A stretch of DNA of 64,000 bases from IMGVR_UViG_3300024999_000030:124001-188000; one strand, 5' to 3'; positions 10,399-56,473 are shown, numbered from the stretch's first letter. Notes: generated by a model not told the origin, from the letters alone. Program-made: numbers and translations.

Positions 10399-13300
10399 GT
10401 GGGATATAATAGTAAGGATATTAAGGTCCTTAAGGGCCTGGATCCTGTTCGTCAACGCCCTGGTATGTATATTGGAAACACGGATGACGAGACAGGAACT
10501 CATCAAACTGCATTTGAAATTATAGACAACGCAATAGACGAGGCCATGAACGGCTATGCCGATTTGGTCGCTGTCACCGTTCATGCGGATGGAAGTCTTT
10601 CTGTGCGCGATAATGGTCGGGGCGTGCCTGTGCAGATGCATCCTACCGAGAAAAAATATGGTGTTGATCTTGTTTTTACAGTACTTCATGCTGGCGGAAA
10701 ATTTGACGAACAGGCATATAAAACATCTGGTGGTCTTCACGGCGTGGGAGCCTCAGTGGTCAACGCTCTTTCTGAATGGCTTAAAGTTGAAGTAAAAAGA
10801 GATGGCAGGAAATATTTTAGAGAATATGCTAATGGTAATCCTATTGGCGAACTTCAGGATCTCGGTCCAAGTAAGAAAACCGGCACTATCGTTACATTTA
10901 AACCGAGCGTTAAGGTGTTTAGAAAGCCGGAATTTAGCTTTGAAATATTAAAAAATAGATTAGAAGAATTAGGCTTTCTCAATGAAGGCGTTGCTATTAA
11001 ATTAACCGATGAGCGCACCAATGAGGAATTTGAAGTTGGTCATAATGACGGTTTGAAACGTTTTGTGGAGAGAATTGAACCGAAGGCTCAAATTCTCACT
11101 CCTCTTATCCAAGTGTCTAGCGCCAAAGGCGAAAAAGTACGAGTGCGTTGTGCATTGCAGTGGAAGTTAGATTTTGATGGAGATAGGCTTCTCGCTTTTA
11201 CTAATAATATTCGTAATGGTGACGGCGGTACTCATGTAGTTGGTTTTAAAAATGTTTTAACACGATGTCTCACTAAAGCCCTAACGGGCAAAAAGGGAGC
11301 TAGCCTCGTTACTGGGGATGATGTTCGTGAGGGCCTTGTTGCTATTATTGATGTTAAAATGAGTGACCCTAAGTTTTCGTCTCAGGTTAAGTCAAAACTC
11401 GTTTCCGAAGAAGCTCGTACGGCATTGGAGAATATGTCTGGGGCCTTTGAAGATTATTTTGAAAAAAATCCAGCTCATTTAAATCGCGTAATGCAAAATG
11501 CCGTGAGAGCTGCGGAATCTAGGGAGGCAGCTCGTAAAGCAAGAGATTTATCTCGAAAGAAAAACGCAATGGATATCGGAGTTCTTCCTGGTAAATTAGC
11601 GGATTGTCAAAGTAAAGATCCAGCCATTAATGAATTATTCTTAGTTGAAGGAGATTCAGCCGGTGGAACAAGTAGACAGGGTAGGGATAGAAAATTTCAA
11701 GCGATTCTTCCATTGCGTGGTAAGGTAATCAACGCAGAAAAAGCGACCCTACATAAACTATTGGCAAATGAAGAAATTAAATCACTCATTGCTGCAATTG
11801 GAACTGGTATTGGAGAAAATTTCGATATTGAGCGTTTAAGATATCATAAGATTTGTATTATGACTGACGCCGATAGTGTTACTGGAGACACCCCCTTAAT
11901 GGTTTTTAATAAGGAAACCAAAGAAATGAAACTATATCGCACAGACGATTTTATTGATAATGTTTGTACGGATATTTCTAAATATCAGATAGTGGCATGT
12001 GATTTGAAACACAAGTCTTTTGGTTTTAGAAACTTACAACAAGTGTATAAGCATCCAAGTAAAAAGCAATTATTTAGAATTACAGATGACAATGGACATC
12101 ATGTAGATGTAACATCAGATCATAGTGTTTTTGTGTATCGGAAAGAAACAAGGTCATTTGAAGCCGTATCTACAGTGCGTCTTTCTGTCGAGGACCAACT
12201 CGTTTCATCTAGAGCTATACCAGATATTACAACAACAGAAATGAAAATTAATCCATATTTGCTTGGTTTATTTATTGGTCATGGGCAAGTAGATAGTCAA
12301 GGTCATTTCAAATTACTGCGTAGTACGAGATTTAAACAACGGGCTGTGGATTTCAACAGCTTACCAGCAGTAAAAATTACCACTACAGATAGAGTAGCTC
12401 AAACAGAAACGTTGGAATTTACCAATAAACGTATTTCAACAATGATATCCAGTTTTAATATTACTAAATCTGAATTACCAAATTGTTTGTATACGGCACC
12501 AACGGCCCAAAAATTAGCTTTTCTGCGTGGTTTATTGGAGTCATGCGCAGCGGTGATGGTTCACCAGGGTATATCTATTTGTGCTGAAGATTCATTGGCT
12601 ACTGGGTTGATCTATCTACTGAGACAATTTGGAGTGTCTCCAGCTATTCTTAGAGGTGGGGCCAAGGCATTAATCAATATTAAAATTAAAGATATGGCAT
12701 TCATTGCTGGGGCCTGGGATCATCATAAAGCAGTTAAAGATTTTGGTGATCTTGTTGCTCCATCCAAAGAATATGAATTGGTAAAAATTAAATCAATTGT
12801 GGAGCTTCCTCAACAACCATATGTTTACGATTTGTCTGTGGATGTGGATCAGAATTTTGTGGCAGGAACGGGAGCAACTCTCTTACACAACACCGATGGG
12901 GCCCACATTAAAACGCTATTGTTGACTTTCTTTTATCGACATATGCCAGAGTTAGTGAAAAAGGGACATATTTATATCGCTCAGCCGCCACTATATCGTT
13001 GTGTTATTCGTGGTAAGGTGCATTACATTTTGAACGATGGGGAATTAAGATTGTTTAAGGTAAAAGAAAAATATGGATTACTTAGAACTTATAAAAAGGG
13101 TAAAAAATATGCTTTTCCACAAGAACAAATTTTTGATATGCCAAAGGGAACTCTTTTATATTCAGATAAACTACTATTTGATGTTCCCATAGAAGATATT
13201 ATGAAACTAGTTACAGAACCAAGAGAAGATCTTAAGCTTCAGCGGTTCAAAGGGTTGGGAGAGATGGCAGCAGAACAATTAGCTGAAACCACTCTAAACC

Positions 13301-13443
13301 CATCTAGCAGAAGAATGTTACAAATTAAAATAGAATCAACAGAAGCTGCAGATAACATGATTACAACTTTGATGGGTGATGACGCAGAGGCTCGTCGCAC
13401 CTTTATTATGGAAAATTGCCAATTCGCTACTCCAGACGTGTGA
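10399..13443 (+). CDS. gyrB: DNA gyrase subunit B interrupted by an intein
   Basis: RPGMYIG, EIIDNAIDE, GGLHGVG, VEGDSAGG, PLRGK, IMTDAD|intein|TDGAHI, QRFKGLGEM. Confidence 0.95.
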   Translation: MGYNSKDIKVLKGLDPVRQRPGMYIGNTDDETGTHQTAFEIIDNAIDEAMNGYADLVAVTVHADGSLSVRDNGRGVPVQMHPTEKKYGVDLVFTVLHAGGKFDEQAYKTSGGLHGVGASVVNALSEWLKVEVKRDGRKYFREYANGNPIGELQDLGPSKKTGTIVTFKPSVKVFRKPEFSFEILKNRLEELGFLNEGVAIKLTDERTNEEFEVGHNDGLKRFVERIEPKAQILTPLIQVSSAKGEKVRVRCALQWKLDFDGDRLLAFTNNIRNGDGGTHVVGFKNVLTRCLTKALTGKKGASLVTGDDVREGLVAIIDVKMSDPKFSSQVKSKLVSEEARTALENMSGAFEDYFEKNPAHLNRVMQNAVRAAESREAARKARDLSRKKNAMDIGVLPGKLADCQSKDPAINELFLVEGDSAGGTSRQGRDRKFQAILPLRGKVINAEKATLHKLLANEEIKSLIAAIGTGIGENFDIERLRYHKICIMTDADSVTGDTPLMVFNKETKEMKLYRTDDFIDNVCTDISKYQIVACDLKHKSFGFRNLQQVYKHPSKKQLFRITDDNGHHVDVTSDHSVFVYRKETRSFEAVSTVRLSVEDQLVSSRAIPDITTTEMKINPYLLGLFIGHGQVDSQGHFKLLRSTRFKQRAVDFNSLPAVKITTTDRVAQTETLEFTNKRISTMISSFNITKSELPNCLYTAPTAQKLAFLRGLLESCAAVMVHQGISICAEDSLATGLIYLLRQFGVSPAILRGGAKALINIKIKDMAFIAGAWDHHKAVKDFGDLVAPSKEYELVKIKSIVELPQQPYVYDLSVDVDQNFVAGTGATLLHNTDGAHIKTLLLTFFYRHMPELVKKGHIYIAQPPLYRCVIRGKVHYILNDGELRLFKVKEKYGLLRTYKKGKKYAFPQEQIFDMPKGTLLYSDKLLFDVPIEDIMKLVTEPREDLKLQRFKGLGEMAAEQLAETTLNPSSRRMLQIKIESTEAADNMITTLMGDDAEARRTFIMENCQFATPDV
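11875..12891 (+). mobile_element. 339-aa intein (Ser1...His-Asn, +1 Thr) with degenerate LAGLIDADG endonuclease
   Basis: Block A SVTGDTP; block B VTSDHSVF; block F VYDLSV; block G LLHN/T; HEN-like blocks YLLGLFIGHG and FLRGLLESCA. Confidence 0.92.
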
Positions 13444-21635: not shown

Positions 21636-22652
21636 ATGAGTTATTATGAAGCTTTAGGTGTTACTAAAGAGGCAACGGCGGAAGAAATTAAAAAGGCATA
21701 TAGGGAAGCCGCTCTTAAGTATCATCCCGATAGAAATCCTGGTAACCAAGAAGCTGAAGATAAGTTTAAAGTTGTTTCTGAAGCGTATTCTATTTTATCT
21801 GATGTTGAAAAACGCAGACAATATGATATGGGTGGCCAGAGCTATGATTTAAATGATCATGAAATGTGGGACGCTTTTTTTCCAGGTTTCCGCCCTAATT
21901 ATGGAGCGCCCGGCTCTCATAGAAGAAATTGGCCAGCAAGAGATGTGGAAACTGTTCTAAATATTACTTTAGAAGAGGCTTTTAGTGGAGTTGATAAAGA
22001 AATTTCATATCGAGCGGACATACCATGCTCGACTTGTAATGGGACCGGAGATTCCTCTGGGTCTAGAGCACAATGCTCTCATTGTCGAGGAACTGGAATG
22101 GAAAGCTCAAGACGAGGCAATTTTGTTGTACAGCGTGCCTGCCCCATATGTGGTGGAGATGGAAATTCTATCACTAATAAATGTGGTAAATGTAATGGGA
22201 GAGGCAGTATTAAAGAAGATAAAATTGTATCTGTAACTATTCCCGCCGGAATTCCAAATAGGGCTCAAATGAGAGTTCCAAACCACGGTGGAACTGGTGG
22301 CTTCCCAGGTCATGAAACTGTGACTGGAGATTTATATGTAAATATTATCATTCAACCACATCCAGAATTTATAAGGCAGGGAGAAGATATTAATTATCAA
22401 TTAAATATCTCTCCAGCTAAAGCTACTCTTGGTGGTACTGTAGATTTAAGTAATTTTATGTTTCATGGAACTGTGAAAATTCCGCCAGGAACCGCCAGTG
22501 GAACTAAATTTGCCGTTCGAGGAAAGGGAATGCCAAAATTTCAAAATAAAGGTCGGGGAGACTTTTATTATGAAGTAATAATTGTTCCCAAGACCCAGTT
22601 AACTGACAAGGAAACTGAACTATATCGACAGTTATTGGAGATGGAACAATGA
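21636..22652 (+). CDS. dnaJ: Type I DnaJ co-chaperone
   Basis: J domain with HPD; four CxxCxGxG repeats; C-terminal IPAG and GKGMP motifs. Confidence 0.95.
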
Positions 22653-31246: not shown

Positions 31247-31864
31247 TTATTTACCTAGAATATTTACTCGTTGTTTCTTTTTCAATACAGGCACAATGAT
31301 TTCTAACATACCATTGTCTTTAAACTCAGCTGTACTGCTCTCCACATCGAATGGTCCATTTAAACCAATTTCAACTCTGTTTTTACCTTTGGGAATTTCA
31401 TTTAAAACGATGAATTTAATGTCATTTTGCGCGTCTTCTTGGGTAACTGGCTCAGGTTTGATTTCAATTGTAATTTTAGCTCCCTCCATAAAAACACTTA
31501 CATCTTCTTTGGGTACACCTGGCACAGCCGCCAGGATATGGAGTTTTTCTAAAATTCTATCTTCATTGGCCTCTCTGATGATTCGTAATTTTGGATATGT
31601 GCCATGTACCCAAATGTTTCCATCGTTGTTATTAATTTCCCTGTAATTGGAGTTAAGTCCTGTTTTGTTAGTCGGTAAATCTAGGTTTGAATTGGTTGGA
31701 TTTGGAATCATTTTATTCCCACGAAAAGGTTCCCAGTAAACTGGGGCGAAGTCTGTGCCAAACTGCCTGTCGATTGCGGTCAGCATGTCTAAGATATCGT
31801 TGTTAAAAACAGCATTAAATAATGGGGGGCGTTCAAGAAAACGGGTGTTATTTTTGGTGCTCAT
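31247..31864 (-). CDS. Hsp20/alpha-crystallin small heat-shock protein
   Basis: AVPGVPKEDVSV...ITIE...AEFKDNGMLEIIVP; RBS ggagg. Confidence 0.82.
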   Translation of the reverse strand: MSTKNNTRFLERPPLFNAVFNNDILDMLTAIDRQFGTDFAPVYWEPFRGNKMIPNPTNSNLDLPTNKTGLNSNYREINNNDGNIWVHGTYPKLRIIREANEDRILEKLHILAAVPGVPKEDVSVFMEGAKITIEIKPEPVTQEDAQNDIKFIVLNEIPKGKNRVEIGLNGPFDVESSTAEFKDNGMLEIIVPVLKKKQRVNILGK

Positions 31865-32624: not shown

Positions 32625-33431
32625 AATATTAAATGAAATAATAGAACATCCTGAAATATTAGACAATAACAATTATAGATCAAGGGAATTCTGTGTACAT
32701 TCCTGTGATGGTTGTTGTTTAGTTATAAATTGGGAATTAGGTATAGTCGACTTAACTGAGGCTCAATTTTTATTAAGATGTATTGAAAAAAGAGCTGAGT
32801 TAGAAATTAGTCCTTCGGTTTCTCAATAGTAAAATTAATTTCAAAAAACTCAACGGGCACCGTTAATTGTATGTTAACGGTGACCGTTCTTTCTTTGTTA
32901 TATATATAATTTGCCCACGTTCGTGAGGTGGTCATTCTGAATTATTGCCCTCCCACGTAACGATTTCCCATGGCTCAATTTTATGTTGAAGTTTAATCTT
33001 TTTTAAGATCATTCGAACATCTTCTAGTGAGCGCCAGGTATCGTTTTCGAAATATGACACCCTTTCCCATTTTTCTTCTATTTTCCAGAAAAGAAATTTA
33101 TGAGCCGGAACAAATTTTTGAATTTGATATATGTAATCACCATTGTCATCGTTGTACTGTCGTTGTCTTTGAATTCTATAAATGAAATCTTCCATTGTTT
33201 TATTCCTCTATAATAATATTGTCGATGTTATTAAGTGGAAAGATAAATTGAGATTTATCTTTATATACAATAAAACATCCGTTCAAGTAAGCATATGGTA
33301 CGGCGCTTTTAACTACGGTAATAACCGTATCTTCGTGATCTGAAAACATATATTGATGAGCCGCTCCGATATTCGTGTGAACAACAATTCTCTTTACCAT
33401 TTTATTTCTCCTTTTTATTTCATCCTTAATC

Positions 33432-33460
33432 AATATAATTATAAATCATGAAATAGTCAA
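33432..33460 (-). promoter_or_regulatory. Promoter TTGACT-N17-TATATT
   Basis: Exact spacing. Confidence 0.65.
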
Positions 33461-36400
33461 TGTATTTATTTAGATTCATTAAACGCTTCCATCACACCTT
33501 TCCACCAAGTATTTGGGCTGTTCCATTCCCACCACATATTTTGTCTCATCCAAAAACTCCAAATCTGGCGCACACTGAATGATGTCTTATTGGGCATGTG
33601 AGAGGGTTTCATTGTTTAAAACCCATCAAATAATGTTTGTAGGGAGATGGGATCTGAAGTTTCAAATGAAGCACATTCTTCTGCGGAATAGCGTGGGCTC
33701 ATCCATCCAATAACTTTAAAAAATTTAGTAGTGATTCCGTCTGTAATAAGAACTTTAATTGTCGCTCCCCTATTTCCAACCGGACGATCACCGATCCCTA
33801 AGTCATAATAACTACCTGCTTTCTCGGCTGCGGATTCAAAACTATCCGCTTCAAAGTCAATATAAAATGAAGAATTATCTGAATTAACAATTATAGCTTT
33901 AATTTTCAAATTTCCTCCTATCTACTTGGTGTTGGTGATTTTGCTTCCCGTCTCATTTTATAGAGATGCCAATTAATATAGATGGAGGCATCTCTATCTC
34001 TATGGTGAGACAAATCCAATTGATCACTAAGCCACTCAACAACAGAGGTCTTATTTTTACTCATTTTTCTTCTGTTTTTATGTCTTTTAATTTTTTAAAT
34101 AAGTCATGTGTTTTAGCCGCAGCTATTTTAAACGAGCAACCTAATTCTTGATTCTTTAATATGGAATTTACAAGAGCTTCTCTAAATTTCTTGTCACGCT
34201 CATATGCAATCCATTTCCACCAAGTTTTATTTATCGTTCGTTTAATAATCGTTGCCATCTTGTGCCTTCTTCAAGACTTCCATCACTTCATTTGCGTACC
34301 TCTTAGCAGCGTCTAAGTCCTCTTGAGTCCATATTTTTTGCTTTTTACGACAAGCAATGTCACGTTTTCTATCTAACTCTTCGGTGCTTTGTTTATCAAT
34401 TAATTTAGAGTGTAATTCTGTATTTTCGCTCATATTTTCTCCGTAAGTGAACATTTCCATATAGTATTTAAATCATATGGCTCTTCATCGGTTTGAAATT
34501 TAGCACCACACTCACAAACGATAGTGCAATTTATCTCTTTTGATAATTCGTAATAAATATTAGTTGCCGCTTGTTTAATATTACAAATTGGACAATCTAT
34601 ATGATTATGCACTACTTCTTTACAATCACAACAACAAAGCTCACGTGTAATTGTTAATCTTCCGCTCCAAGAGTATTTCCATGTGTCTTGGGTGCTAGTC
34701 ATCGCTCTTTTTACATGACCTGGTAATTAAATCATATTTCATATTTATTATATCTGAAATACTAATTGTAATATGAGATGTTATGGTAAATACAGGCATC
34801 TTTACATATTTATTGGAAAACTTATACCATGTATTTTTAATAGTGGGGGGCTTTATTTCTTTAGCAGTAGGCATTTTCATTGTTACCAGAGCCCCTTAAG
34901 TCGCATTGCCGCTTCCATAGATTTTTTCAAATCTATATAATACAACCACCTTTTCCATGTTTGTGCAATTCTCATAAACTTATCCTTCGTAATAATATAA
35001 GATTTATCACTATAATAGTCAAGGTGAGATGAAATAATGCCGAATGGAACGTTCATATTCAAACTGTTTTCGTAATTGCCACGTAGCGCTAATTGTAAGT
35101 ACAATATATTCTGTTTTTAATTTTCCATCAGTGGTTATTTCACAAACAGTATATGGCCAACCAACTCTACTAATCCATTCTGTAAATTCTTTATCGATCA
35201 TAACGTTGAAATTCTTCTCCTGTAAAAGTTTTGACTATTACATATATAAACCAGGTGTCTTTAATATTACGACTTAATATTTTTTTCATTATATTATTGT
35301 TTTAATTTAATTTTATAAATACATATTACTTATTTTAATACAATATTGTCCAGTTTTCTTTCTAATGTGATCTGCTTTATATTTCCACCAAACACTAGCT
35401 ATGCTTGGATTTTTATCTTTAAATATTTTTGCTATAATTTTCATTATTTGTCTCATTAGGGTTTTTTCCCAACGCCGCGTCTTTTCGTTGCCATGGCACG
35501 GGCTCGACCATGATTTCGCCATACAATACTATCAGTGGGAATATCATGAAATATACAATATTTATACCAATTACAATCGATGTTATGGCGTGTTCTTTTT
35601 TTATCTTGAAACGATTGATATAAGCTTCCACAAATGCGTAAAAAGAGGCAACTGCTATAGCTAAACATAAGAGGTCCATTTATTTATTCCTCTTTAGTTT
35701 CCAAAGATGATGAATTGGTGTAGTTGGATCCATGCGAATATCATTATACTGTTTCCAATATCTCCAATTAAATTTAGTATTTATATATAAAGTAACACCC
35801 TTAATAGTACTTGCGGGCATTTGAATTTTAATCCAAGAAGAGAAGGACATCATGACACTATCTCCTTAGTCAACTTTCGATAATAAAGCCAAAGGCACCA
35901 CGTCCTTTTGGCGTATCTGAATGAATATATATGAGAAGGTGATCCTTTGGCCATCCGCCAAGATGTCTATCTCCCCCAGCTACTTCAAGCGCAGAAATCC
36001 ATTGGGAAAAAGATATCATTCTTCTCTCTTTTTTTAAAATCTTTTTCTATTTGCCATAAAATCCAATTATCATAAATATTAATAATTAGATCTGTGTCTA
36101 AATTTACTGATTCTATTTGTCGACGAATCCAGTCAGAATATTTTTGTCTTAATTTTACATCAACCACGATGGCCCACTCTCCCTTAGGATTTTTTACTTA
36201 TCCACCGCCAAAGCCAAGTGTTAAAGATACAAATATTTAAATTTTGGTGTGGCCAATTTAACTTTTGATTAATTAATTTAACATATTTAAGATCTAATTC
36301 TTTTTCGTTCATTTGTCGTCTTTATGGCTTCGTTTATGGCTTCGTGGCTTGTATAATAATTTCGAAGTCTCCAGGTTGACTCTGGTGTGTCGTCATGCGC

Positions 36401-37770
36401 ATAATCAAAACGTCCACCAGAATCAACCGACATTATCCATTTTTTCCATTCCTTAAATGTCATCTTTTTACTTCCACCCATTTATCACTTGGACTGGGGT
36501 GTTCGGTTAACTCTCTCTTAATCCACGACTCAGCCGCCCACAATCCCCCAAAATATATAGTCTTGTCTTCGGCTCCAGTTACATCTACCCAATCGTAGCT
36601 GGCGTATGGCGATGGAGTGAGATTTAATCGTGGGGTCCATTTCCATTCTTGAATCTTATATCTTTCTCCATTTGTAACAATCCTGAATCTAGTACCAATT
36701 GGCCTAACATATGGATGTTCTGGAATTTCTGGAATATTTATTTCTGATGGAATTGATTGATTAGCTTGAAATCTTCCTTGAGTAATATTGGAATTAGAGT
36801 GCCCCTTAATGGTATATGTGGTCTTACCCAAGTCAGTTTTTCCAAAACAATAAATAATCGTTATAACTAAACCTATAAAAAACATAATCATTGCAATATT
36901 AGTAGCTTGAGCTTTATTCATATTATTTATCTTTCTTTTGTGTGGAACAAATAACGGTTGCCCCATATATGGTGGCTATGTGTCCAGATTGAATCATTTC
37001 TCTTTTTATTGCAGCAATTTTATTACGAGTTTCCCACTGTTTCCATGTGTTGAAAATATTAGGTTTCGTCTTTTTATATTTAAGGGAGTGCCAATCTTTC
37101 CAGTCTTTCATGCTACCACTCTATATATTTTAAATTCTTGATTAATGTCCATCACACTACATATAATTGTTCCAATATTATATTTTCCATTTGCGTTACT
37201 CAGCGCCCGCTTTCGGGTGGCCACATGATAAATCATCCAAGCATAAAGAATTGAATTATAACGAATGTTAATAAACTTATTCATATTACCACCCTATAAA
37301 TTATGCATTTATTATTATTGCGAATTGTTAACATTGAACCTGGAAATAAATCATATTTATTTGAACAGCTAAGCCAAGTGTGTATAACAGAACCGAATGA
37401 TATAAATTTTGTCATTTTATTCGGTTTCTCTTAATTTTTCAAGTCTTTTGGCGTGTTCAATCATCCAAGGTTCAATATCAATCTTACGAGTGAAGGCTGC
37501 GGCATATAAAGCTCCGAGACTGTCTTTAGGTGCTCCCTCTTTAACACATATTTCAATTATTTTAATTAGCAAGTCAGTTTGCCTTGCGGTTAAACTTTCA
37601 GATAATTCGCTTACAACTTCTACGTCAGTCATTTTATTTCCTTATATCATTAGATTAAATTATTTCTCTTTTTATTGTGGCTATTTTAATGGAAATTTTC
37701 CATTAAAATAAAACCTAATAAACCAATAATGTTTCCAGGTACTCTTAATTGTTGGGGCCCACGTTTTACA

Positions 37771-37833
37771 ATTAGTATCTAAAATTTTAATATCCGAATT
37801 ATAATTGATATCTAAAATTTTAATATCCGAATT
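37771..37833. repeat. 33-bp-period tandem duplication (tatctaaaattttaatatccgaatt x2) encoding NSDIKILD x2
   Basis: Seen directly in the sequence and in ORF 37681-37863. Confidence 0.85.
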
Positions 37834-37859
37834 AAACGCCGTACCTAAATCAATAATCG

Positions 37860-38369
37860 TCAAAATTCTTTTCCATCACAATAACGATGAATGTTAATCA
37901 ATTCTATATCAACTGAGCGGACAAGAACATCGGCTTCTTCAAGCATAATTACAGATCGTTCATGCGAGGCTTTCCAATTTTCCCATTTACCGAGTTCTTT
38001 CATGTGTTTTTCCCAGCCTGAATCAATAATAATCTCTTTGATACCAACCTGAATAATAGCCCTGGCACAATCAGCGCAGGGAAAAGCACTAATATAGATT
38101 CGGCATCCTTTTAAAGATACACCCTCACGAGCCGCAGAATAAATGGCATTGCGTTCGGCGTGTTCCATCCAAAAGTATTTTTCTCCATTTTCACGAGATT
38201 GTCTTTCAGAAACATCATCTTTAATACCACGAGGAAATGAATTATATCCGGTGGCCTTTACTATATTATCTCTATTTACAACTATTGCACCGATATGGGT
38301 GTTTTGATCTTTACTTCTCGTGGAAAGTAAGTGTACAAAATTTAGAAAGTAATTATCCCAGTCATTCAT
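37860..38369 (-). CDS. dCMP deaminase
   Basis: WDNYF, RSKD, GYN, HAERNA, PCADC. Confidence 0.92.
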   Translation of the reverse strand: MNDWDNYFLNFVHLLSTRSKDQNTHIGAIVVNRDNIVKATGYNSFPRGIKDDVSERQSRENGEKYFWMEHAERNAIYSAAREGVSLKGCRIYISAFPCADCARAIIQVGIKEIIIDSGWEKHMKELGKWENWKASHERSVIMLEEADVLVRSVDIELINIHRYCDGKEF

Positions 38370-38388
38370 TTAATAACCTCTCAGTTTA

Positions 38389-38417
38389 AATATAATCCCT
38401 GGCTATCAGAATGTCAA
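38389..38417 (-). promoter_or_regulatory. Promoter TTGACA-N17-TATATT
   Basis: Exact spacing; upstream of the dCMP deaminase. Confidence 0.7.
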
Positions 38418-39558
38418 TACTGGGTGGCATAAATAACACAAAAGCTCCCAAAGGGAGCCCGCCCGGCCCAATACCCTTTTTCTTGCTACTCCTTTGAGTG
38501 TCGAACCCAACTACCCTTCAATAACTCATTGTACATATATTCAGTTTTTTGGCCCTCGAAATATAATTTAAACCTAATCCATTTAAGCCAATTATTTCGA
38601 ATTGACGCCTGTTGTTTATTATATTTAGTATATTTGGCCCAAGCCGAAAATTCTGACATATTATTCCTCGTCCCTTAATCTTAAGCTTAATCGCCATCTT
38701 ATAATCATTATTTTAAAAACATATCCCTTCCACATTTGAATTATTGAATTAGATTTTATTTCATTAATATCTATCATGAATTAAAATTCATTCCTTATAA
38801 ACCTATCAAAGTATTGCCATAATCTCCAATTTTGAGAAATGGTAATTTTACCCAAGATCTCCTTCGCAGCCTGGGGCTGCCAGCTATTAGCCCATTTACC
38901 AAAAGACTTGATCATCTATTTGTTTCCTATCTTATAAATCTATTGAAATATCTCCACATTCTCCAATTTTGAATAATAGTGATATTATTTTTTGGTGTTT
39001 TGCTTTTAGTCAACCAATGACCAGCGGACCAAATACTGAAAGACGTCATCTTGTCCATTCGTCTCCATACATGTTATAGTTTTTCCATAAATACCAAATC
39101 TTCCATGTTGGCATATTACCGTTACATAAAAAAGCAACCCAATCGTTGTAAGAAAAGGTAAGAAGCCATTTATCATTATATAATAAAAGTGGTTGAGGAA
39201 ACATGTACCCTCCATGAATATTCTCAATCCATATTTTAAAACTTGGCTCTTTCATCTATTCCTTCCTAAGTAAGCCCGCTCGCCTATATTATACCATTCC
39301 CACTCTTCCCAAGTCCGAGATATGTTTAATATTTCAGTAATACCAGCAATTTGCAACCATTCCTGAAAGGTTCTATTAATCAAATTAAATTCCTTTATGT
39401 TAATGGTCTCTAGTATAATTAAGGCCGCTGTACCATTTCCACTCTTCCCAAGTCCGAAATGTATTTAACGCTTCAATAGTGTTAATAACCTGTAACCATT
39501 CCTGAAAGGTTATCTTTTCTTGAAAGGTTGTTTTAGTCAAATTAACTTCCTTAAAAAC

Positions 39559-39587
39559 AATATAACTTATAAATAATAATTTGTCAA
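39559..39587 (-). promoter_or_regulatory. Promoter TTGACA-N17-TATATT
   Basis: Exact spacing. Confidence 0.7.
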
Positions 39588-42466
39588 TTCCCTAAAGTAG
39601 AGCGCCAAAGATAAAAAATCCAAACATAACGAATACTCATTTTCGTATTAAACTTATATCAAAAAAACTAATACCATGAATAATTCTATAGCGATCATAA
39701 TAAAACTTCGTCCAAGTTTTATGAATGCTCATTCTTTTTTGATCTCCGTGATGCAATCACCATTGCAATTGGCCAAAATGAAAAATTAAGACAATATACT
39801 AAAAATAACGCAGGAAGAGAACTATTGTTAGGGTATTCTTCTCGCTGTCTTTTTACTGCATAACCACCCCAAAACACACCCGTTACTATATAACTCCATG
39901 TTAAATAATGTAGTAATGTCCAAATCATTTTAAATTCTCCTTTTAAATTATTATTTTTCCACTTGTATTGTTTCTTCGCCTTGTATTGTTTCTTCGCCAA
40001 GGCGGATTATATGTCGTATTTATATAAATATGTTGACTTGCCCTCCATCTTAAATTTGATATATAATTTTGCCAAGTTTGAAAAATGTAACGTTTAGGCT
40101 TATCAGTACGATAAGTCCTATAAAATATAATTATTATAGCTAAAATAATAAAACCTTCCGTTATTGCCCAAAATGCAAGTGGGTTCATTTAAACTCCAAA
40201 AGATAGGCATTTTGATTTCTTCTTTTAAAGAATGAGTAATATAACATTGATTCCATTAATTTTCTCCTTTAACCTGGTATTTCTTCTTTTAGCATAAAAA
40301 GGGTTTAGGGAATAATATTTATCAATATACCAGATGCGTCTTGTTGGTTCTGTGCAACATATACTTTATAATCTTCGTAATGTATAAGATCAGCTTGAAT
40401 AAGCCAATTCAATGTAAATAATATTTCTTCTCGTAGGCGCTGATGAAGCTCATGATCATTTTTGAAACATCTATACTTCTTTGATAAAAAATTAATAAGA
40501 TCTTGTTCCACGTCTCCATCTTCGTCTGGAGAACTGAAATAAAATAAGGAAGGATCTTGAAGCATCCATGCCCCTTTAGTGCTAAATATTTCTGGTTTCA
40601 TTTTGTCATCCTCATTACCCTTTTCCCACCTACCCAATGTATTATTTGACCATAGCGTATAAACCATGACCAATGAGACCAAATAGTGGCAATAGTGAAG
40701 GGCTGTAGATAGGGGCAGCTCAATCTCATCCATTCTGAAAAAGTAACTTTTTGTAACTCTGAACGTTTCATCTATTATATTTTTCCGTTTCTCTTTTTGT
40801 GTGTATAAATTCTAAATAAGCTTGCCAATTTTTATAAACGGTTGGAGTAAGATATAAGTCTTTATTCTTTAGAAACATTATAAGATCTGCAAAAATAAAA
40901 TCATTTGCCATGAGTCCAAGTCTCCGTCTCCAGGAAATCACTTCCCATACAATACCATATCCAGGTCCAATAAATGCTAGATCCCCTACGCATGACTCTT
41001 CACATAGTGCTTCGCGTTATATGATACCCAAACCCACTTAATCGTTCCCCGTTTAATTAAGATGAGGGCCCTTTTAAAGGAAGTCTCAATAATCTGATTA
41101 GTCTGATTTAAATTCATACTTCCATGGTTGAACATAATCTGAAAGTTTATCAGGGGACATATACCACATACTTTGTTGATATACTTTCCAATAAAACCAA
41201 GTTTGAGACGGATTATCCCCAAGAACAATTCCTGGTTGATATCTACATTGTTTAGCCAACCACTCATTAAAGGTTAATTTTTCAAAAAAACCCATATTTA
41301 GCTCCGTGAAAATTTATATGTCTGATATACCTTCCAAATCATCCAAGTTCCTCCTGGAGTGTCGAACTTCCCCCAGGTTCCTCTCCATCGCCATCTCTTA
41401 ACCCATTCATTAAAGGTTAACTTAGTAGAAGGATTCAAGTTCCACCTCTCTATTAACATGAGTATTAAAATATACCCAGAGCGCCCAAGTTTGATCTGGG
41501 GTGTCCGTTATCACATAGTTCTTTGTTTCAGAAATACAAGCCTCCAGCCATTCACCAAACGTCATTTAAGATTACTCTTGAAAATATAATGAAAATATAT
41601 CCAGAGTGACCAAGTTTGATGTGGGGTGTCTATGTAATTCGTTCTTGAGACATAATTTTCTAACCATTGATTAAATGTCATATTCTATTTCCGCCCCACA
41701 TTAAATCCCTCATATAGGGTCCAAAGCTTCCAGGTTCCACATATGGTTTTTCTAGCTAAATCAAAATTTATATTATTCCATTCACCATACCATTTATTTT
41801 CGCCAACTACTGTAATCCATTGATTAAATGTCATAAGCTCACTTTTTAACGAGTTTATTAAGAATGATATAATTATACCAGGTCCAAGAAACAGGGATGC
41901 TGGATTTAATTACAACATACTTATCATATAAAGACTCACAATAAAGAAATAAGAAAAATAAGAGTAAAATTATCATCAGTCTTAAAGTACCTTTACTGCT
42001 TCTATAAGTTTCTGTTTAATTTGTAGAAATTCCTCTTCATTGCTTTGATATTTAGAATTCATATAGCAAAGTAAATCAGAGGGGGAACCTAAATTATACT
42101 CGATGTTCCATTCCCAATCTTTACTGTCTGCCTTTAAGGTCAATTGAATTGCCGTATGCTGATGTTCCTCAATTTTACCATAAATTACTGAATCATCATC
42201 TAACATTAGATTATGCTTATAATAATAAGGAAGCTCAATATCTATTTCCTTTTGAATTGTGGTTTTCTCAGGTACTATAAATCTAGCCATTTTTATCTCT
42301 CCTTTATCTTTCTGATCTATATTCTTCTGGCTCATCACTATCGTTTTTCTCTATAGATATATAATAGCCAGCCCGACAAAATATCTTATGAATGCAATTT
42401 TCACATGCCTGTTTATTATTGATAAGTTTAGTACAAATAGCATAAGTAATGTCTTTCATAGGTAAT

Positions 42467-42495
42467 AATATAAGATATAATCAATCAAAAATCAA
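42467..42495 (-). promoter_or_regulatory. Promoter TTGATT-N17-TATATT
   Basis: Exact spacing; upstream of ORF 41982-42338. Confidence 0.6.
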
Positions 42496-43903
42496 GGCAT
42501 AATCTAAAATCTTGTCCTATGCCCGACTGACACAAGATATAATTGATATATGTTCCAATTCCATGTGATATTGATTTTCTCGGGTCTAATAACTAATTCG
42601 AGCCAATCATGAAAAGATATATCATAAAAGGATATTGTAGAGTTATTCATTCTTTTGCCTCTTTAATAGAAGTTGACAAGATACCATTTAAATATATGCC
42701 AAGTTCTAAAAATACTGACTCCATTTTTATGTGTAGTATTCTTCATATTAATCAACTATATCATACCACATATGCATCCCAAGTCCATTTAATATTAAGA
42801 CTATCCCGTTTATTATGTTTCATAATTATATCACACCATTCTTTTATATGTTCTCATGTTTTCTAATTGATATTTTATACCATTGAAACATATTCCAATT
42901 CCATTCAATATTTCTATTAGAGGGTGCTGTTAAAATTACTTTAAGCCATTCATTGAAAGAAGGGATTTTCATATCAAGTTTTCTCCAATTATATAAGACT
43001 TATAGGTTCTATATAACGACCAAGTCCATTTTATAGGAATAATACCCCTATAAGAATCAACTCCGTTTACATTAAGCCATGTCTTATATGTCATCTTCTG
43101 AAATATAGACACCAGTACCTCCACAAACGGCACAATCCTCATTTAAGTAATCTTTACCAGTACCAGTGCAATTATCGCATTCTTTGGTAGTCCAGGTTCG
43201 CGTATCTGCACTAGTTTTCCAGTAATAATAAAAGCCCCATGTATCAGCTATTGCAGTGGCTATGATAAGAGTACCAATCCTTTATGTCTATATTGTCGCC
43301 ATACATTTATAATATAGTAATTTTGTTTATCCATATAATATGATGAATAAGGTATGCCAATCATAAGTAATAATACACACAATAAAAGGAAATATTCTAA
43401 ACCATTCATCCAGCCCATTGCCGCTCCATTAAATCCATTAAAAATGAATCCATGTATATAGGCTCCACATTCTACGAATAGAGATAACTTGATATTTAGG
43501 AAGCCTATCAGTACCAAAATTCAATTGATACCACTTAGTTCTCTTATACTGTTCTAAATTTATCTTAGCCTTCATATTACCTCTCATAGATAAAGCCATA
43601 CATAAAAAGCCCATACCTTACGAATGGATGTTTTTTCTGTAGGTTTATTATCACATAGCCATAGATTCAATAATTGTTTAAAGGTAACCATGATATATCT
43701 CCTTATCCAAAAATTCTAAGCCATATGTATATACGCCATCTTCTATGAATAGACATAAATTTATTTCCTAAAATAGGACACTCCATCTGTATGAAATCTT
43801 TGCCACATATACCATCCATATGTATCCCATGTCCAAGAGATAGAAATAGCTTTATTGCAAAGGGCGAATACACATACTAAGGAATTCTTTAAAAGTTAGC
43901 ATT

Positions 43904-44374
43904 CTATCTCTTCATCTCTAAAAGAGCGGCTAGTTCCAAGAAAGTAAGGATACTGGTTTCATTCATATTAGTATTCATCATAATATCACAATCTATAAGG
44001 ATATAAGTTCCCCGAGAAGCATCAGTATATAGATTAGTATTAGGAATGGCATCTTTTAGTATTCTAGTTTTACTCCATGGGCACTCAGAACAATTTAATA
44101 TATTATTATCCGTAAGTATACAAGTCGGATTCTTTATATCATTATGCCGAGTAATACTTCCACGTGCAGCTCTCCATTTATGATCTGGATTAACTATTTC
44201 TTCTGCTTGTTTAAAGTGTTTAATATACTGTCTATTGATGTTATTAAGAGAATTACACCACTCTTCCCCTTTGTTTTCTTCAGTTACACATGATTCAAAG
44301 TCGCGTATGTATGAATGTATACGGTAGAGGGTTGAGTCGATAATGTAAGATTTATGTGTTGACTGTTCGCTCAT
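43904..44374 (-). CDS. Divergent Cys4-family paralog
   Basis: C...CSECPW...C...ILTFLELAALLE. Confidence 0.55.
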   Translation of the reverse strand: MSEQSTHKSYIIDSTLYRIHSYIRDFESCVTEENKGEEWCNSLNNINRQYIKHFKQAEEIVNPDHKWRAARGSITRHNDIKNPTCILTDNNILNCSECPWSKTRILKDAIPNTNLYTDASRGTYILIDCDIMMNTNMNETSILTFLELAALLEMKR

Positions 44375-44389
44375 TATGGCCTCACTATC

Positions 44390-44418
44390 AATATAATTTG
44401 AACGTTGTTAATTGTCAA
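44390..44418 (-). promoter_or_regulatory. Promoter TTGACA-N17-TATATT
   Basis: Exact spacing; heads the long leftward transcription unit. Confidence 0.72.
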
Positions 44419-44574
44419 GTAAGAGTCGATGATAATTAAATAAGGATAATAATGGGGCCGCCGTTAAGAGGATACTGTATAGGATTGATATGGGTATTGT
44501 ATGGATATTGGGTATTTAAACAGGAGGTTATAAAGAGATCGGTGTAATAATGTAAAGGCTTATGAATACTGAAT

Positions 44575-44890
44575 AAGTGAGTCATTTATGACACAGTATA
44601 ATAATAAGATAAGTGAAATAATATAGAGAGGAGTTAGGAGAGAGTTAGGAGAGAGATACTGAGTTGTGTCTACAAAAATGACACATGTGACTTAAATGAC
44701 ACACTGGCGTATAATAGATAAGTGAAATTTATAATGAAATGACATTAAGATAACTATTAGATACTGGTAAAAGTGAGTCATTTATGACACACTTTACTAA
44801 TAGTATGAGCGGTTAAGTGCGATAATATGAGATAATATGAAGAATATATACTGATAATCAACATGTGACAAAAATGACTCACTTTCACTT
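44575..44890. repeat. Iteron-like cluster: aagtgagtcatttatgacac x2 (44575-44594, 44771-44790) plus an inverted variant (~44860-44889)
   Basis: Identical 20-mers with internal palindrome gtcat-tt-atgac, in an AT-rich non-coding divergent region. Confidence 0.75.
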
Positions 44891-45088
44891 AAGTTGTGAA
44901 AATACTACCCCCCAGACAATAAGAGTCTGAGGTAATATCAGTATCTCCCCGCCCTAAGTCTAAGCCAAGCATCAAGCGACTTACACTTGTAAAGAGTTTG
45001 GCCAGTATCAAAGTATAGCGTGACGCTGTGTCATGCTAGATACTGGCGCGAGTGTAAGAGACTTAGATACTGGCCAAAGGAGTTAAAG

Positions 45089-45830: not shown

Positions 45831-46027
45831 GGGGCAGCATCTCAATCATCTGCCTTGACCTCAGTACGTTGAAGTGCTCTGAGGCTAAGTAGGACTAGGA
45901 CTCTCTTATAGTAGAGCCAGCCTACCCCCAAATATAGCCAGTATCCAGAGCTGGTCGATCAGTATCTTAATTACTTAGATATTGGTCGGCCATAATGTGG
46001 GTACTGTATATAGTGGTGTGTGTTTGA

Positions 46028-46199
46028 ACCATACCACATATAGACAGAAAGATGGGTTTTGAGAAAAATGAGATCTAATACCTATAGTTAGTTAGTATCT
46101 CATTGTATAATACTGGCGCTATAATTAAGTATGTCTATATGTAGTGGTGTTAGTAAAGACCATACCACATATAGACAGAAAGATGGGTTTTGAGAAAAA
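46028..46199. repeat. 41-bp direct repeat (46028-46068, 46159-46199) with a partial third copy at ~46223
   Basis: accataccacatatagacagaaagatgggttttgagaaaaa seen twice. Confidence 0.9.
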
Positions 46200-55809: not shown

Positions 55810-55885
55810 GGGTCGTTAGCTTAGCATTGAAAGCCATCGGCTCATAACCGATAGATCACAGGTGAGAATCCTGTACGACCCACCA
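55810..55885 (+). tRNA. tRNA with CAT anticodon (elongator Met or Ile2), atypical elbow
   Basis: Acceptor gggtcgt/acgaccc + ACCA; anticodon arm atcgg-ctcataa-ccgat; T arm acagg-tgagaat-cctgt. Confidence 0.85.
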
Positions 55886-55886
55886 T

Positions 55887-55961
55887 GGGCCCGTAACTCA
55901 ATGGTAGAGTATCGCCCTTTTAAGGCGAGAGTTGAGGGTTCGAGTCCCTCCGGGCCCACCA
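55887..55961 (+). tRNA. tRNA-Lys(TTT)
   Basis: Acceptor gggcccg/cgggccc + ACCA; tcgcc-cttttaa-ggcga; TTCGAGT. Confidence 0.95.
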
Positions 55962-55999
55962 CTTATCTTATACAGGCGAACGCCAGGAAGGAGGTAACC

Positions 56000-56380
56000 G
56001 TGCCGTGCGATTGCGGTAATTGCCATTTCGGATTCAACTGTTCCAAAGAGTGGCAGACTCTCCACCCCGGAACGACCTGGTACGCCTGCGAGTTCTGCGG
56101 ACTCTATCAGGCTTCAGCTCCCATGTGTAACAAGTGCGAGCTGCAGGAGGAAGAGACCAAGTCCGGTATGAAGAGGTACGAGTTCCAGCGGCGCTCCCCA
56201 TTCTCTGGTAAGATTCACACCATGACCATCCAGATGACGGAGCAGCAGTTCGCGGAACTCTCCCAGCCCAACGGTCGTCACATCCAGGACATCCTCCCCC
56301 ATTGCACCCCCGATGAGAGGGAGTTCATCATGACCGGTATCACTCCCGAGGAATGGGAGCAGACCTTCGGGAAGAAGTAG
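56000..56380 (+). CDS. Cys-rich N-terminus plus conserved phage domain (IQ...P...EREF..TG.T..EW)
   Basis: RBS ggaggt before GTG 56000. Confidence 0.65.
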   Translation: MPCDCGNCHFGFNCSKEWQTLHPGTTWYACEFCGLYQASAPMCNKCELQEEETKSGMKRYEFQRRSPFSGKIHTMTIQMTEQQFAELSQPNGRHIQDILPHCTPDEREFIMTGITPEEWEQTFGKK

Positions 56381-56387
56381 TTACTTT

Positions 56388-56473
56388 GCGGCTGTGGTGG
56401 AATGGCATACACTACAGACTTAAAATCTGTCGGTCGTAAGACCTTGCGGGTTCGAATCCCGCCAGCCGCACCA
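56388..56473 (+). tRNA. tRNA-Leu(TAA), long variable arm
   Basis: Acceptor gcggctg/cagccgc + ACCA; acaga-cttaaaa-tctgt; TTCGAAT. Confidence 0.95.

What the first reader, a model, noticed from the sequence alone, without database searches (positions are those of the whole stretch)
34883..43902. Array of ~20-25 Trp-rich microproteins, mostly invisible to ORF callers
Seen by manual translation of the - strand: head-to-tail 35-70 aa ORFs, often with ATGA overlaps, sharing an N-terminal (T/S)F.(E/Q)W and a C-terminal TW..W/Y.(W)Y around a hypervariable middle. Examples: MTFNQWLENYVSRTNYIDTPHQTWSLWIYF (41681), MTFGEWLEAC..DTPDQTWALWVYF (41565), MINRTFQEWLQI..SRTWEEWEWY (39383), MKIPSFNEWLKV..EWNWNMFQWY (42972), MTFKEWKKW..DTPESTWRLRNY (36463). 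Inference: a fixed two-helix scaffold with a variable loop, i.e. a library of small binders for host takeover or anti-defence. I do not recognise the family.
Basis: partly seen in the sequence, partly recalled or inferred. Interest (0 to 1): 0.78.

Follow-up and report, generated by a model that had tools for sequence, protein, structure and literature searches.

The report
Expanded Trp-rich mini-protein family, jumbo phage
An 11-kb stretch of a 333-kb groundwater phage genome is packed with about 40 tiny, basic, tryptophan-rich genes of one previously undescribed family that multiplies by tandem duplication; its function is unknown, most likely an arsenal of accessory host-interaction proteins.

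Summary
On the minus strand from 32.8 to 43.9 kb, about 40-46 small ORFs (18-93 aa) share a helix signature [S/T/D/N]-[I/P]-x-x-[T/N]-W-x-x-[W/Y]. I counted 24 strict copies against 0.33 expected after shuffling residues within each ORF. About 20 of them also carry the N-terminal (T/S)-F-x-(E/Q)-W-(L/I) motif.

The conservation is at protein level. Third codon positions are free, there is no DNA tandem repeat, and a second phage (L092, GC 46% against 33%) has a syntenic array with orthologues (pN 0.19-0.49 below pS 0.5-0.9).

AlphaFold2 predicts helix-loop-helix for two subfamilies (pLDDT 79 and 86). The proteins are basic (median pI 9.7) and 6.4% Trp. Five near-identical sigma70-like promoters point to transcription by the host RNA polymerase.

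The promoter-proximal half evolves by recent tandem duplication. The distal half is collinear between the two phages.

No Pfam, PHROG, NCBIfam, PDB or fold match was found. There is only a weak link to DUF5419, and only two genomes carry the family.

The N-terminal motif resembles the capsid-targeting sequence of T4 internal proteins, so some members may be packaged and injected. The "binder library" function remains an inference. Automatic gene callers found about half of the genes, so they are not "mostly invisible".

The parts
32807..44374 (-). Whole block of tightly packed, often overlapping small genes. The family array lies between 32807 and 43873.
   Evidence: low GC (0.31-0.34) and negative GC skew
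44390..44418 (-). sigma70-like promoter TTGACA-17-TATATT in front of the first gene of the block
39559..39587 (-). sigma70-like promoter TTGACA-17-TATATT in front of ORF 39540
38389..38417 (-). sigma70-like promoter in front of the dCMP deaminase gene. A terminator-like hairpin at 38442-38460 precedes it.
34994..35022 (-). sigma70-like promoter TTGACT-17-TATATT. It implies that the true start of the next gene is the ATG at 34975 (product begins MRIAQTW).
33432..33460 (-). sigma70-like promoter TTGACT-17-TATATT
43904..44374 (-). First gene of the block: 156 aa, Cys-rich, not a family member. It is 63-66% identical to its L092 counterpart and has no known family.
43584..43691 (-). Two-motif member, 35 aa (VTFKQL ... 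SIRKVWAFY)
42969..43142 (-). Two-motif member; likely start at 43094 (MTYKTW ... PIKWTWSLY)
42844..42972 (-). Two-motif member, 42 aa. AF2 model: helices 6-13 and 22-41, pLDDT 86.
42504..42650 (-). Two-motif member, 48 aa; recent paralogue of 42972
   Evidence: D5
41685..41834 (-). Two-motif member, 49 aa (MTFNQW ... TICGTWKLW)
41562..41681 (-). Two-motif member, 39 aa, DTP..TW.LW subtype; not called by the automatic caller
41422..41565 (-). Two-motif member, 47 aa (P0001). AF2 model: helices 3-13 and 23-46, pLDDT 79.
41298..41459 (-). Two-motif member, 53 aa, DTP subtype
41098..41295 (-). Two-motif member, 65 aa, DNP subtype; paralogue of 41459
40598..40771 (-). Two-motif member, 57 aa
39400..39540 (-). 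Two-motif member, 46 aa, TTG start
39252..39383 (-). Two-motif member, 43 aa, TTG start. It still shares 78% DNA identity over 86 nt with 39540, so it is a recent tandem duplicate.
   Evidence: D2
39046..39255 (-). Two-motif member, 69 aa; orthologue at L092 7589-7795
38927..39058 (-). Two-motif member, 43 aa
38781..38915 (-). Two-motif member, 44 aa; tandem duplicate of 39058 (75% DNA identity over 64 nt)
   Evidence: D4
38486..38659 (-). Member, 57 aa (SEFSAW ... SIRNNWLKW)
36287..36481 (-). Two-motif member; the caller's start is 36463 (58 aa, P0011). DTP subtype, 73% identical to the L092 12393 orthologue.
35985..36167 (-). Member, 60 aa; orthologue at L092 12556-12741
35850..36019 (-). 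Frameshifted two-motif member. The N-terminal part is in one frame (36019-35870) and the C-motif in the -1 frame (35954-35850), with the junction at CCAAAAGG. The L092 orthologue is intact.
35680..35853 (-). Two-motif member, 57 aa; 53-55% identical to the orthologue at L092 13042-13230
35019..35201 (-). Two-motif member, 60 aa, with a long loop
33918..34064 (-). Member, 48 aa; orthologue at L092 15571-15732
43703..43873 (-). C-motif-only member (SIHRRWRIY)
43438..43614 (-). C-motif-only member, 58 aa (SIRRMWSLY)
43260..43517 (-). Transmembrane segment followed by the C-motif
42663..42823 (-). Two mini-ORFs of 20 and 30 aa carrying the C-motif (NIKWTWDAY, SIFRTWHIF). They are either tiny genes or remnants.
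41839..41976 (-). Hydrophobic N-terminus followed by the C-motif, 45 aa
40768..40993 (-). Two C-motif ORFs (30 aa and 47-57 aa)
39943..40188 (-). Transmembrane segment followed by the C-motif, 81 aa
39584..39756 (-). A 39-aa ORF with the motif near its N-terminus (SIHKTWTKF), and a possible 17-18-aa mini-ORF (MSIRYVW...)
38661..38777 (-). C-motif ORF, 38 aa
37681..37863 (-). C-motif ORF, 60 aa, with an internal 33-nt tandem repeat
36923..37284 (-). Two C-motif ORFs (58 and 62 aa). ORF 37111 has an orthologue in L092.
36184..36312 (-). C-motif ORF, 42 aa (IFNTWLWRW)
34883..35522 (-). Three C-motif ORFs: 35522-35313, 35289-35191 and 34975-34883
34061..34880 (-). Two ORFs with the motif at the N-terminus followed by other sequence (34880-34695 and 34258-34061). 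Both have L092 orthologues. Two non-family genes lie between them.
32807..33612 (-). Distal members 33612-33466 (63-66% identical to its orthologue) and 32935-32807, interleaved with non-family genes
37860..38369 (-). Embedded non-family gene: dCMP deaminase
36460..36966 (-). Embedded non-family gene: 168 aa with an N-terminal transmembrane segment. Its C-terminal 89 aa are 80% identical to L092.

Best explanation
The region is a host-polymerase-transcribed accessory-gene block of a 333-kb phage. One undescribed family of small, basic, Trp-rich helical proteins has expanded there to about 40 tandem copies.

Shown or predicted here:
- All members share an aromatic amphipathic helix. It starts at a capping S/T/D/N followed by I or P, then x-x-T/N-W-x-x-W/Y, usually followed by more Y/F/W.
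- In about 20 members an N-terminal helix (T/S)F.(E/Q)W(L/I) packs against it, giving a 40-60-residue helix-loop-helix. The connecting loop varies in length (about 8-30 residues) and in sequence.
- The family grows by tandem duplication at the promoter-proximal end. It is kept as one-to-one orthologues at the distal end.

Inferred:
- The conserved aromatic residues form the structural core, and the loop and exposed helix faces give each copy its own target.
- The products are non-essential host-interaction proteins (takeover or counter-defence) made from the start of infection.
- This would make the region comparable to the hyperplastic early regions and internal-protein loci of T-even phages.
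For: - Motif far above chance and strand- and region-specific.
- Codon-level conservation.
- No DNA tandem repeat; DNA similarity is found only between adjacent paralogues.
- A second phage (L092, GC 46%) has a syntenic array with about 44 motif ORFs and 29 reciprocal best hits, with pN below pS in all comparable pairs.
- In the 43.9-38.4 kb half the nearest relatives are adjacent paralogues of the same genome. In the 37.6-32.8 kb half they are collinear orthologues.
- AF2 predicts helix-loop-helix for two subfamilies, pLDDT 79 and 86.
- Median pI is 9.7, net charge +4, and Trp content 6.4% against 0.6% in the long genes of the same phage.
- Five promoters TTGAC[AT]-17-TATATT with ribosome-binding sites.
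- Fourteen coupled start/stop overlaps.
- Analogy: in T4, small counter-defence genes amplify in tandem, and T-even internal proteins are diverse anti-defence proteins (PMC9391042, PMC3012670).
Against: - There is no direct evidence of expression. No RNA run was listed that holds the region.
- No partner or target is known.
- More than half of the members lack the N-terminal helix, so 'one scaffold' does not describe the whole family.
- Very aromatic, basic helices could instead act on membranes or nucleic acids.
- The AF2 models rest on an alignment of 31 paralogues from only two genomes.
- The promoter sites are consensus matches only.
Confidence: 0.5

Rival explanations
1. Internal-protein-like cargo. 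The N-terminal helix is a capsid-targeting sequence like that of T4 IPI/IPII/IPIII. On this reading the two-motif members are loaded into the prohead, sit as basic proteins in the packaged DNA, and are injected with it to act at once against host defences.
For: - The T4 capsid-targeting sequence (CTS) is MKTYQEFIAE (PMC8442874). I read T4 IPII/IPIII as MKTYQEFIAE and IPI as MKTFKEFTS from the T4 record.
- Targeting depends mainly on residues 4 and 7, the two aromatic residues (PMC9026906). The family's T-F-x-E-W-L has the same T, aromatic, E, aromatic, aliphatic pattern at the N-terminus.
- L092 6973 begins MLTFKEFLS, identical to IPI at 7 of 9 positions.
- A regular expression for this N-terminus hits exactly the 3 IPs in 15 kb of T4, 5 array ORFs in the window and 8 start sites (7 distinct ORFs) in L092. 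In control phage loci it hits 0.16% of peptides.
- The proteins are basic like the IPs.
- T-even IP loci are hypervariable and share only the CTS (PMC3012670).
- denV lies beside ipII/ipIII in T4 and inside the distal array of L092.
Against: - Only about 17-20 of about 45 members carry the motif, and in several it lies 4-14 residues from the predicted start.
- No conserved (L/I)-x-E processing site follows it.
- AF2 places this helix in the folded core.
- Mature products would be only about 30 residues long.
- No enrichment of T4-type late promoters.
- Whether this phage has a T4-type prohead protease and scaffold was not examined, because those genes lie outside the window.
- No Pfam or PHROG hit to IP families.
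Confidence: 0.22
2. Membrane-interface peptides. The Trp/Tyr-rich helix flanked by basic residues lies at the membrane-water interface. The family would then act on the host envelope, for example in superinfection exclusion, control of lysis, or inhibition of envelope enzymes.
For: - Very high aromatic content plus net positive charge.
- Several members in both phages place the motif directly after a transmembrane segment: window 43517, 40188 and 41976; L092 8749, 8967, 13149 and 13747.
Against: - Most members have no transmembrane segment.
- The conserved cap residues and the paired N-terminal helix suggest a defined soluble fold.
- About 40 diversified copies are not needed for plain lipid binding.
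Confidence: 0.12
3. Shared docking helix. The C-motif is a short recognition helix that brings many otherwise different small proteins to one common hub, such as a host machine or one of the phage's own chaperones.
For: - The motif occurs in different contexts: C-terminal, N-terminal, and after transmembrane segments.
- The phage encodes GroEL, DnaJ and Hsp20.
Against: - No partner was identified.
- The conserved positions are the hydrophobic stripe expected of a buried core rather than of an exposed ligand.
- AF2 buries it against the N-terminal helix in the two-motif class.
Confidence: 0.08
4. Library of precursors for ribosomally made, modified peptides, with Trp-rich cores such as W-N-W or W-T-W.
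For: Many small ORFs have conserved and variable parts. Some cores (NIEWNWNMF, NITWNWNIY) recall, from my memory only, Trp-crosslinked peptides.
Against: - None of the roughly 30 larger window ORFs scanned against Pfam or PHROGs matched a radical-SAM, YcaO, lanthipeptide or other maturase family.
- The conserved parts are at both ends and the variable part is in the middle.
- Members are predicted to fold.
Confidence: 0.02
5. Non-coding DNA repeat or regulatory element that merely translates into a recurring peptide, or an artefact of a recoded stop codon.
For: None beyond the recurrence itself.
Against: - Third codon positions are free.
- Identical residues are often encoded by different codons.
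- Orthologues persist across a 13-point GC shift with pN below pS.
- TRF and the repeat search find no array-wide DNA repeat.
- Reading any one stop codon as sense does not merge the ORFs, and all three stop codons are used.
Confidence: 0.01

Closest known systems
T-even phage internal proteins (IPI, IPII, IPIII) and their polymorphic loci
   Same: Small, basic, non-essential proteins that are diverse between related phages. They share an N-terminal M-x-T-(F/Y)-x-E-(F/W)-(I/L) signature. IPI and IPIII have anti-defence roles (PMC3012670, PMC9391042).
   Different: - The proteins here are 40-60 aa, against 95-193 aa in T4.
- There are about 40 copies of one family, where T4 has a few unrelated proteins sharing only a leader.
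- There is an extra conserved Trp helix and no conserved (L/I)xE cleavage site.
- Packaging has not been shown.
Hyperplastic early regions of T4-type phages, and tandem amplification of small counter-defence genes (tifA)
   Same: Blocks of small, overlapping genes driven by the host polymerase. Turnover between relatives is fast, and expansion by local duplication has been documented (PMC9391042).
   Different: T4 regions hold mostly unrelated ORFs (my own knowledge). Here a single family has been fixed as dozens of diverged paralogues.
DUF5419 (PF17441) / phrog_519, about 55-aa proteins of cluster A mycobacteriophages (e.g. Che12 gp95/96)
   Same: N-terminal M-(T/S)-F-x-x-W-(M/L), and some members have D-Q-T-W-x-D-W. 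Profile-profile match: 62% probability, E 7.6e-5. phrog_519 was also a weak independent hit of one array member.
   Different: - No member reaches any Pfam threshold.
- The DUF5419 hallmarks D-I-A-D and the third helix are absent.
- DUF5419 is single-copy and acidic to neutral by eye.
- Its function is unknown as well.

Membership tests
DUF5419 (PF17441) / phrog_519 | Match to the family HMM at or above the curated threshold | tested here: not met
   None of the 42 members matches PF17441 at E <= 1. One member hits phrog_519 at E 0.046.
DUF5419 (PF17441) / phrog_519 | Profile-profile homology over the whole domain, including the invariant D-I-A-D and the C-terminal helix | tested here: inconclusive
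   hhalign of A5 against an independent 7-sequence DUF5419 alignment gives 62% probability and E 7.6e-5. The D-I-A-D block has no counterpart.
T4-type internal proteins (CTS-bearing) | N-terminal capsid-targeting sequence M-K-T-(Y/F)-x-E-F with aromatic residues at positions 4 and 7 | tested here: inconclusive
   The signature is present at the extreme N-terminus of 5 window ORFs and 7 L092 ORFs, and displaced by 3-14 residues in others. The resemblance covers 5-7 residues only.
T4-type internal proteins (CTS-bearing) | Processing site (L/I)-x-E after the targeting sequence | tested here: not met
   No conserved Glu or (L/I)xE appears after the N-terminal helix in alignment A5.
T4-type internal proteins (CTS-bearing) | Presence in the virion, and a T4-type prohead protease and scaffold in the same genome | not testable with these tools
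   The structural genes lie outside the 64-kb window. The phage is uncultured.
RiPP precursor array | Dedicated maturation enzyme nearby | tested here: not met
   The Pfam and PHROG scans of larger ORFs in the window show none. The rest of the 333-kb genome was not examined.
Non-coding tandem DNA repeat | Nucleotide-level periodic repeat, with conservation independent of codon position | tested here: not met
   TRF finds only tiny local repeats. The logo shows codon periodicity. pN is below pS.
Stop-codon-recoded long genes | ORFs merge when one stop codon is read as sense | tested here: not met
   The longest ORFs stay at or below 208 codons under any single recoding. Stop usage in the motif ORFs is TAA 21, TGA 15, TAG 10.

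The most novel reading that the evidence does not exclude
A jumbo phage builds, by repeated tandem duplication, a diversified set of about 20 capsid-targeted hairpin mini-proteins on a common aromatic scaffold. It injects them together with its DNA as a pre-made, multi-target counter-defence cocktail. This would be an expanded, single-family version of the T-even internal-protein strategy.
Probability: 0.2. Interest if true: 0.8.

Novelty: new variant of a known kind. Interest (0 to 1): 0.62.

Why it matters
Phage accessory regions full of tiny genes are a main source of new anti-defence and host-takeover proteins, but they are usually collections of unrelated orphans.

Here one 40-60-residue fold has been copied about 40 times and diversified, with a conserved aromatic core and a free loop. 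If the copies have different targets, this is a natural example of scaffold-based diversification in a virus. It would also be a compact, easily synthesised set for screening against defence systems.

The T4-like targeting signature, if functional, would extend the internal-protein concept to jumbo phages and give a handle for loading cargo into large capsids.

The case also shows that roughly half of such genes are missed by routine annotation.

Tried and rejected
- **Near-identical DNA search in GenBank phages:** no match.
- **Family libraries:** Pfam, PHROGs and NCBIfam scans of all 42 members gave only scattered chance-level hits.
- **Word-based protein search with the family profile:** only the phage's own proteins.
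- **Exhaustive HMM search of 1.84 billion representatives:** self hits, one protein of the related phage (P0013), and one artefact, a 2067-aa tandem-repeat protein that matches only by repetition.
- **Structure and PDB searches:** PDB sequence profile search, Foldseek against PDB and BFVD, ESM Atlas search by shape, and a language-model look-alike search gave nothing specific. The look-alike search for the 156-aa first gene gave only composition-driven hits.
- **Search for further relatives:**
  - through the dCMP deaminase: 80 loci, none with the array except the window's own contig;
  - through the first gene and the conserved 168-aa gene in IMG/VR, JGI metagenomes, GTDB genomes and the 5.8-billion protein set: only the two phages.
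- **Degenerate DNA pattern for the two motifs:**
  - in viral contigs: chance hits plus Che12;
  - in bacterial genomes: a single-copy Rhodobacteraceae gene and chance hits, no arrays.
- **Strain variation for dN/dS:**
  - the ENA contig L091 differs at 3 of 17,937 bases;
  - the contigs of three groundwater DNA runs laid on the array show no variants; the low word shares reflected fragmentary assembly.
- **RNA evidence:** no listed run holds the region.
- **T4 late-promoter motif TATAAATA:** not enriched.
- **Literature:** no paper mentions DUF5419 or a comparable Trp-rich phage family.
- **YozE-like SAM domain (recalled from memory):** no Pfam support.

Full report
**Source and setting**

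The window is part of IMGVR_UViG_3300024999_000030, a 332,730-bp uncultured phage contig. The same phage was assembled repeatedly from groundwater metagenomes.

- Window 1-26 kb (+ strand) encodes ribonucleotide reductase, dUTPase, dNMP kinase, GroEL, an AAA ATPase, a GyrB/T4 gp39-like topoisomerase subunit with an intein, an IMPDH/GMP-reductase-like enzyme, DnaJ and ThyX.
- From 44.4 kb down to 32.8 kb the minus strand is one dense block of small genes. It has low GC (0.31-0.34) and strong negative GC skew.
- To the right of 44.4 kb, transcription diverges on the + strand and GC rises to 0.43-0.53.
- Nothing similar at DNA level exists in GenBank phages.

Yes. All quoted ORFs exist.

- About 46 minus-strand ORFs between 32.8 and 43.9 kb carry it. 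A few are probably chance or out-of-frame, leaving about 40.
- The strict form occurs 24 times, against a mean of 0.33 and a maximum of 3 in 1000 shuffles that keep each ORF's composition. Trp-richness alone therefore does not explain it.
- The N-terminal (T/S)F..W motif occurs 17 times against 1.2 expected, always within the first 27 residues.
- The + strand of the same DNA, the rest of the window, and 79 other AT-rich phage loci are at background.
- Fourteen gene junctions are ATGA-type overlaps.

**Protein or DNA?**

That criterion is not met.

- In the logo of 51 motif instances, first and second codon positions carry the information and third positions are free.
- In paralogue pairs, 20-40% of identical residues use different codons.
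- TRF finds no array-wide repeat. The repeat finder finds DNA similarity only between adjacent young paralogues and in the short MTFNQW-coding stretch.
- No single stop-codon reassignment merges the ORFs.

The exhaustive profile search recovered one foreign protein, P0013. It lies on a 172,952-bp JGI contig (L092, GC 46%) that carries a syntenic array with about 44 motif-bearing ORFs.

- Twenty-nine reciprocal best hits link the two blocks.
- For the 25 pairs with at least 25 aligned codons, pN is 0.11-0.49 (0.19-0.49 for the family members among them) and pS is 0.35-1.2 (mostly 0.5-0.9, largely saturated). This is purifying selection on the proteins across a 13-point GC shift.

**Anatomy and evolution**

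- **Transcription signals.** Five minus-strand sites share TTGAC[AT], a 17-nt spacer and TATATT. Each lies about 15-35 nt before a ribosome-binding site and start codon (44418, 39587, 38417, 35022, 33460). A terminator-like hairpin lies at 38442-38460. This suggests several host-polymerase units, i.e. early expression. That step is inferred from consensus matches.
- **Three classes of member.**
  - Two-motif proteins of 35-69 aa, about 20 in the window.
  - Proteins with the motif at or near the N-terminus followed by unrelated sequence, for example 34258, 34880, 39756 and 34975.
  - A few proteins with a transmembrane segment followed by the motif: 43517, 40188 and 41976.
- **Composition.** Members are basic (median pI 9.7, net charge +4) and 6.4% Trp. 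The long genes of the same phage are 0.6% Trp.
- **Two evolutionary regimes.**
  - The distal half (37.6 to 32.8 kb) is collinear with L092 11.3-17.6 kb and holds one-to-one orthologues.
  - In the proximal half (43.9 to 38.4 kb) each gene's closest relative is usually its neighbour in the same genome: 42972/42650, 41681/41565, 41459/41295, 39540/39383 and 39058/38915. The same holds in L092. Some of these pairs keep 75-88% DNA identity over 42-86 nt.
  - This is birth-and-death evolution by tandem duplication.
- **A broken copy.** One copy (36019-35850) is frameshifted at CCAAAAGG. A -1 shift there restores the DTP..TW.LW.YY consensus, and the L092 orthologue is intact.

**Structure**

AlphaFold2 was run with a 31-sequence alignment of two-motif members from both phages.

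- The 47-aa protein at 41565: helices 3-13 and 23-46, mean pLDDT 79, pTM 0.56.
- The 42-aa protein at 42972: helices 6-13 and 22-41, mean pLDDT 86, pTM 0.61.

The second helix begins at the conserved cap-(I/P) position. The region between the helices is the length- and sequence-variable part. Fold searches return nothing specific, as expected for a hairpin.

**Relation to known families**

- No member matches Pfam, PHROGs or NCBIfam, and no solved structure is related by sequence.
- A pattern scan happened on mycobacteriophage Che12 gp95/96, a DUF5419/phrog_519 protein. An independent DUF5419 alignment matches the family profile at 62% probability, and phrog_519 was a weak hit of one member. 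I treat this as a possible distant relationship. The family has no known function and no literature.
- A more informative resemblance is to the capsid-targeting sequence (CTS) of T4 internal proteins.
  - The CTS is MKTYQEFIAE (PMC8442874; confirmed for IPII/IPIII), and IPI begins MKTFKEFTS.
  - Residues 4 and 7 are the main targeting determinants (PMC9026906).
  - The family's T-F-x-E-W-L has the same pattern, and L092 6973 starts MLTFKEFLS.
  - A regular expression for this N-terminus finds exactly the three IPs in 15 kb of T4 and only array members in the window and L092. Its background is 0.16%.
  - T-even internal proteins are diverse, basic, injected anti-defence proteins that share only the CTS (PMC3012670, PMC9391042).
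  - Against membership: there is no conserved processing site, many members lack the motif, the helix is part of the predicted fold, and packaging cannot be tested here.

**Mechanism**

What is shown is a selected, rapidly duplicating family of small basic aromatic helical proteins in a block that looks host-transcribed. What is inferred is function.

I consider it most likely (about 0.5) that these are accessory host-interaction proteins whose conserved aromatic residues make the fold and whose variable parts give specificity. The rivals and their weights are:

- Packaging and injection in the manner of T4 internal proteins: about 0.2. This overlaps with the main reading in purpose but differs in route.
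- Action at the membrane interface: about 0.1.
- A shared docking helix for one hub: under 0.1.
- RiPP precursors or a DNA-level element: effectively excluded by the present tests.

**Novelty and limits**

The family is absent from curated libraries and is known from only two genomes among billions of sequences searched. Blocks of small accessory genes and tandem amplification of such genes are known in phages. A single mini-protein family fixed at about 40 diverged copies is unusual. I therefore rate it a new variant of a known kind.

There is no expression evidence, no population variation, and no host. Every functional statement is inference.

Noticed in passing
window 10399-13443 (+): The GyrB / T4 gp39-like topoisomerase II large subunit (1014 aa) is interrupted by an intein (Pfam Intein_splicing, residues 527-831).
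   Followed up: no
window 6422-8083 (+), 21636-22652 (+), 31247-31864 (-): The phage encodes its own chaperone set: GroEL, a full-length DnaJ, and an Hsp20-like protein.
   Followed up: no
window ~44400-45020 and rightwards: GC steps sharply from 0.31-0.34 in the array to 0.43-0.53 in the + strand genes to the right, inside one phage genome, with divergent transcription from this gap. tRNA-Met, tRNA-Lys and tRNA-Leu lie at 55810-56473. The right-hand ORFs scanned had no family match above threshold.
   Followed up: partly
window 46004-46068 and 46135-46199: A 65-nt imperfect direct repeat (87.7% identity), 131 nt apart, in the + strand region. It was seen as a secondary BLAST hit.
   Followed up: no
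window 35850-36019 (-): A family member is split by a frameshift at CCAAAAGG. A -1 shift there restores the family consensus. It is either a pseudogene or a slippage site. The orthologue at L092 12741-12911 is intact.
   Followed up: partly
window 37775-37849 and 39962-39998: In-frame tandem repeats inside small ORFs: a 33-nt unit x2.3 in ORF 37863-37681, and a perfect 18-nt unit x2.1 encoding AKKQYK twice in ORF 40000-39719.
   Followed up: no
L092 16282-16731: The related phage has a denV-type pyrimidine-dimer glycosylase (Pyr_excise) inside the distal part of its array, where the window phage has an unrelated 77-aa ORF. In T4, denV sits next to ipII/ipIII.
   Followed up: partly
window 36986-37036 vs 37652-37702: A 51-nt stretch encoding the tail of ORF 37111 recurs at 78% identity downstream of ORF 37863 in a broken frame. 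It is probably a remnant of an older duplication.
   Followed up: no
protein P0010 (not in the window): The best-scoring hit of the exhaustive profile search was a 2067-aa protein made of 25 near-identical repeats, each containing INPSESWRHWKQDF. Its score comes from summing the repeats, and I judge it unrelated.
   Followed up: partly
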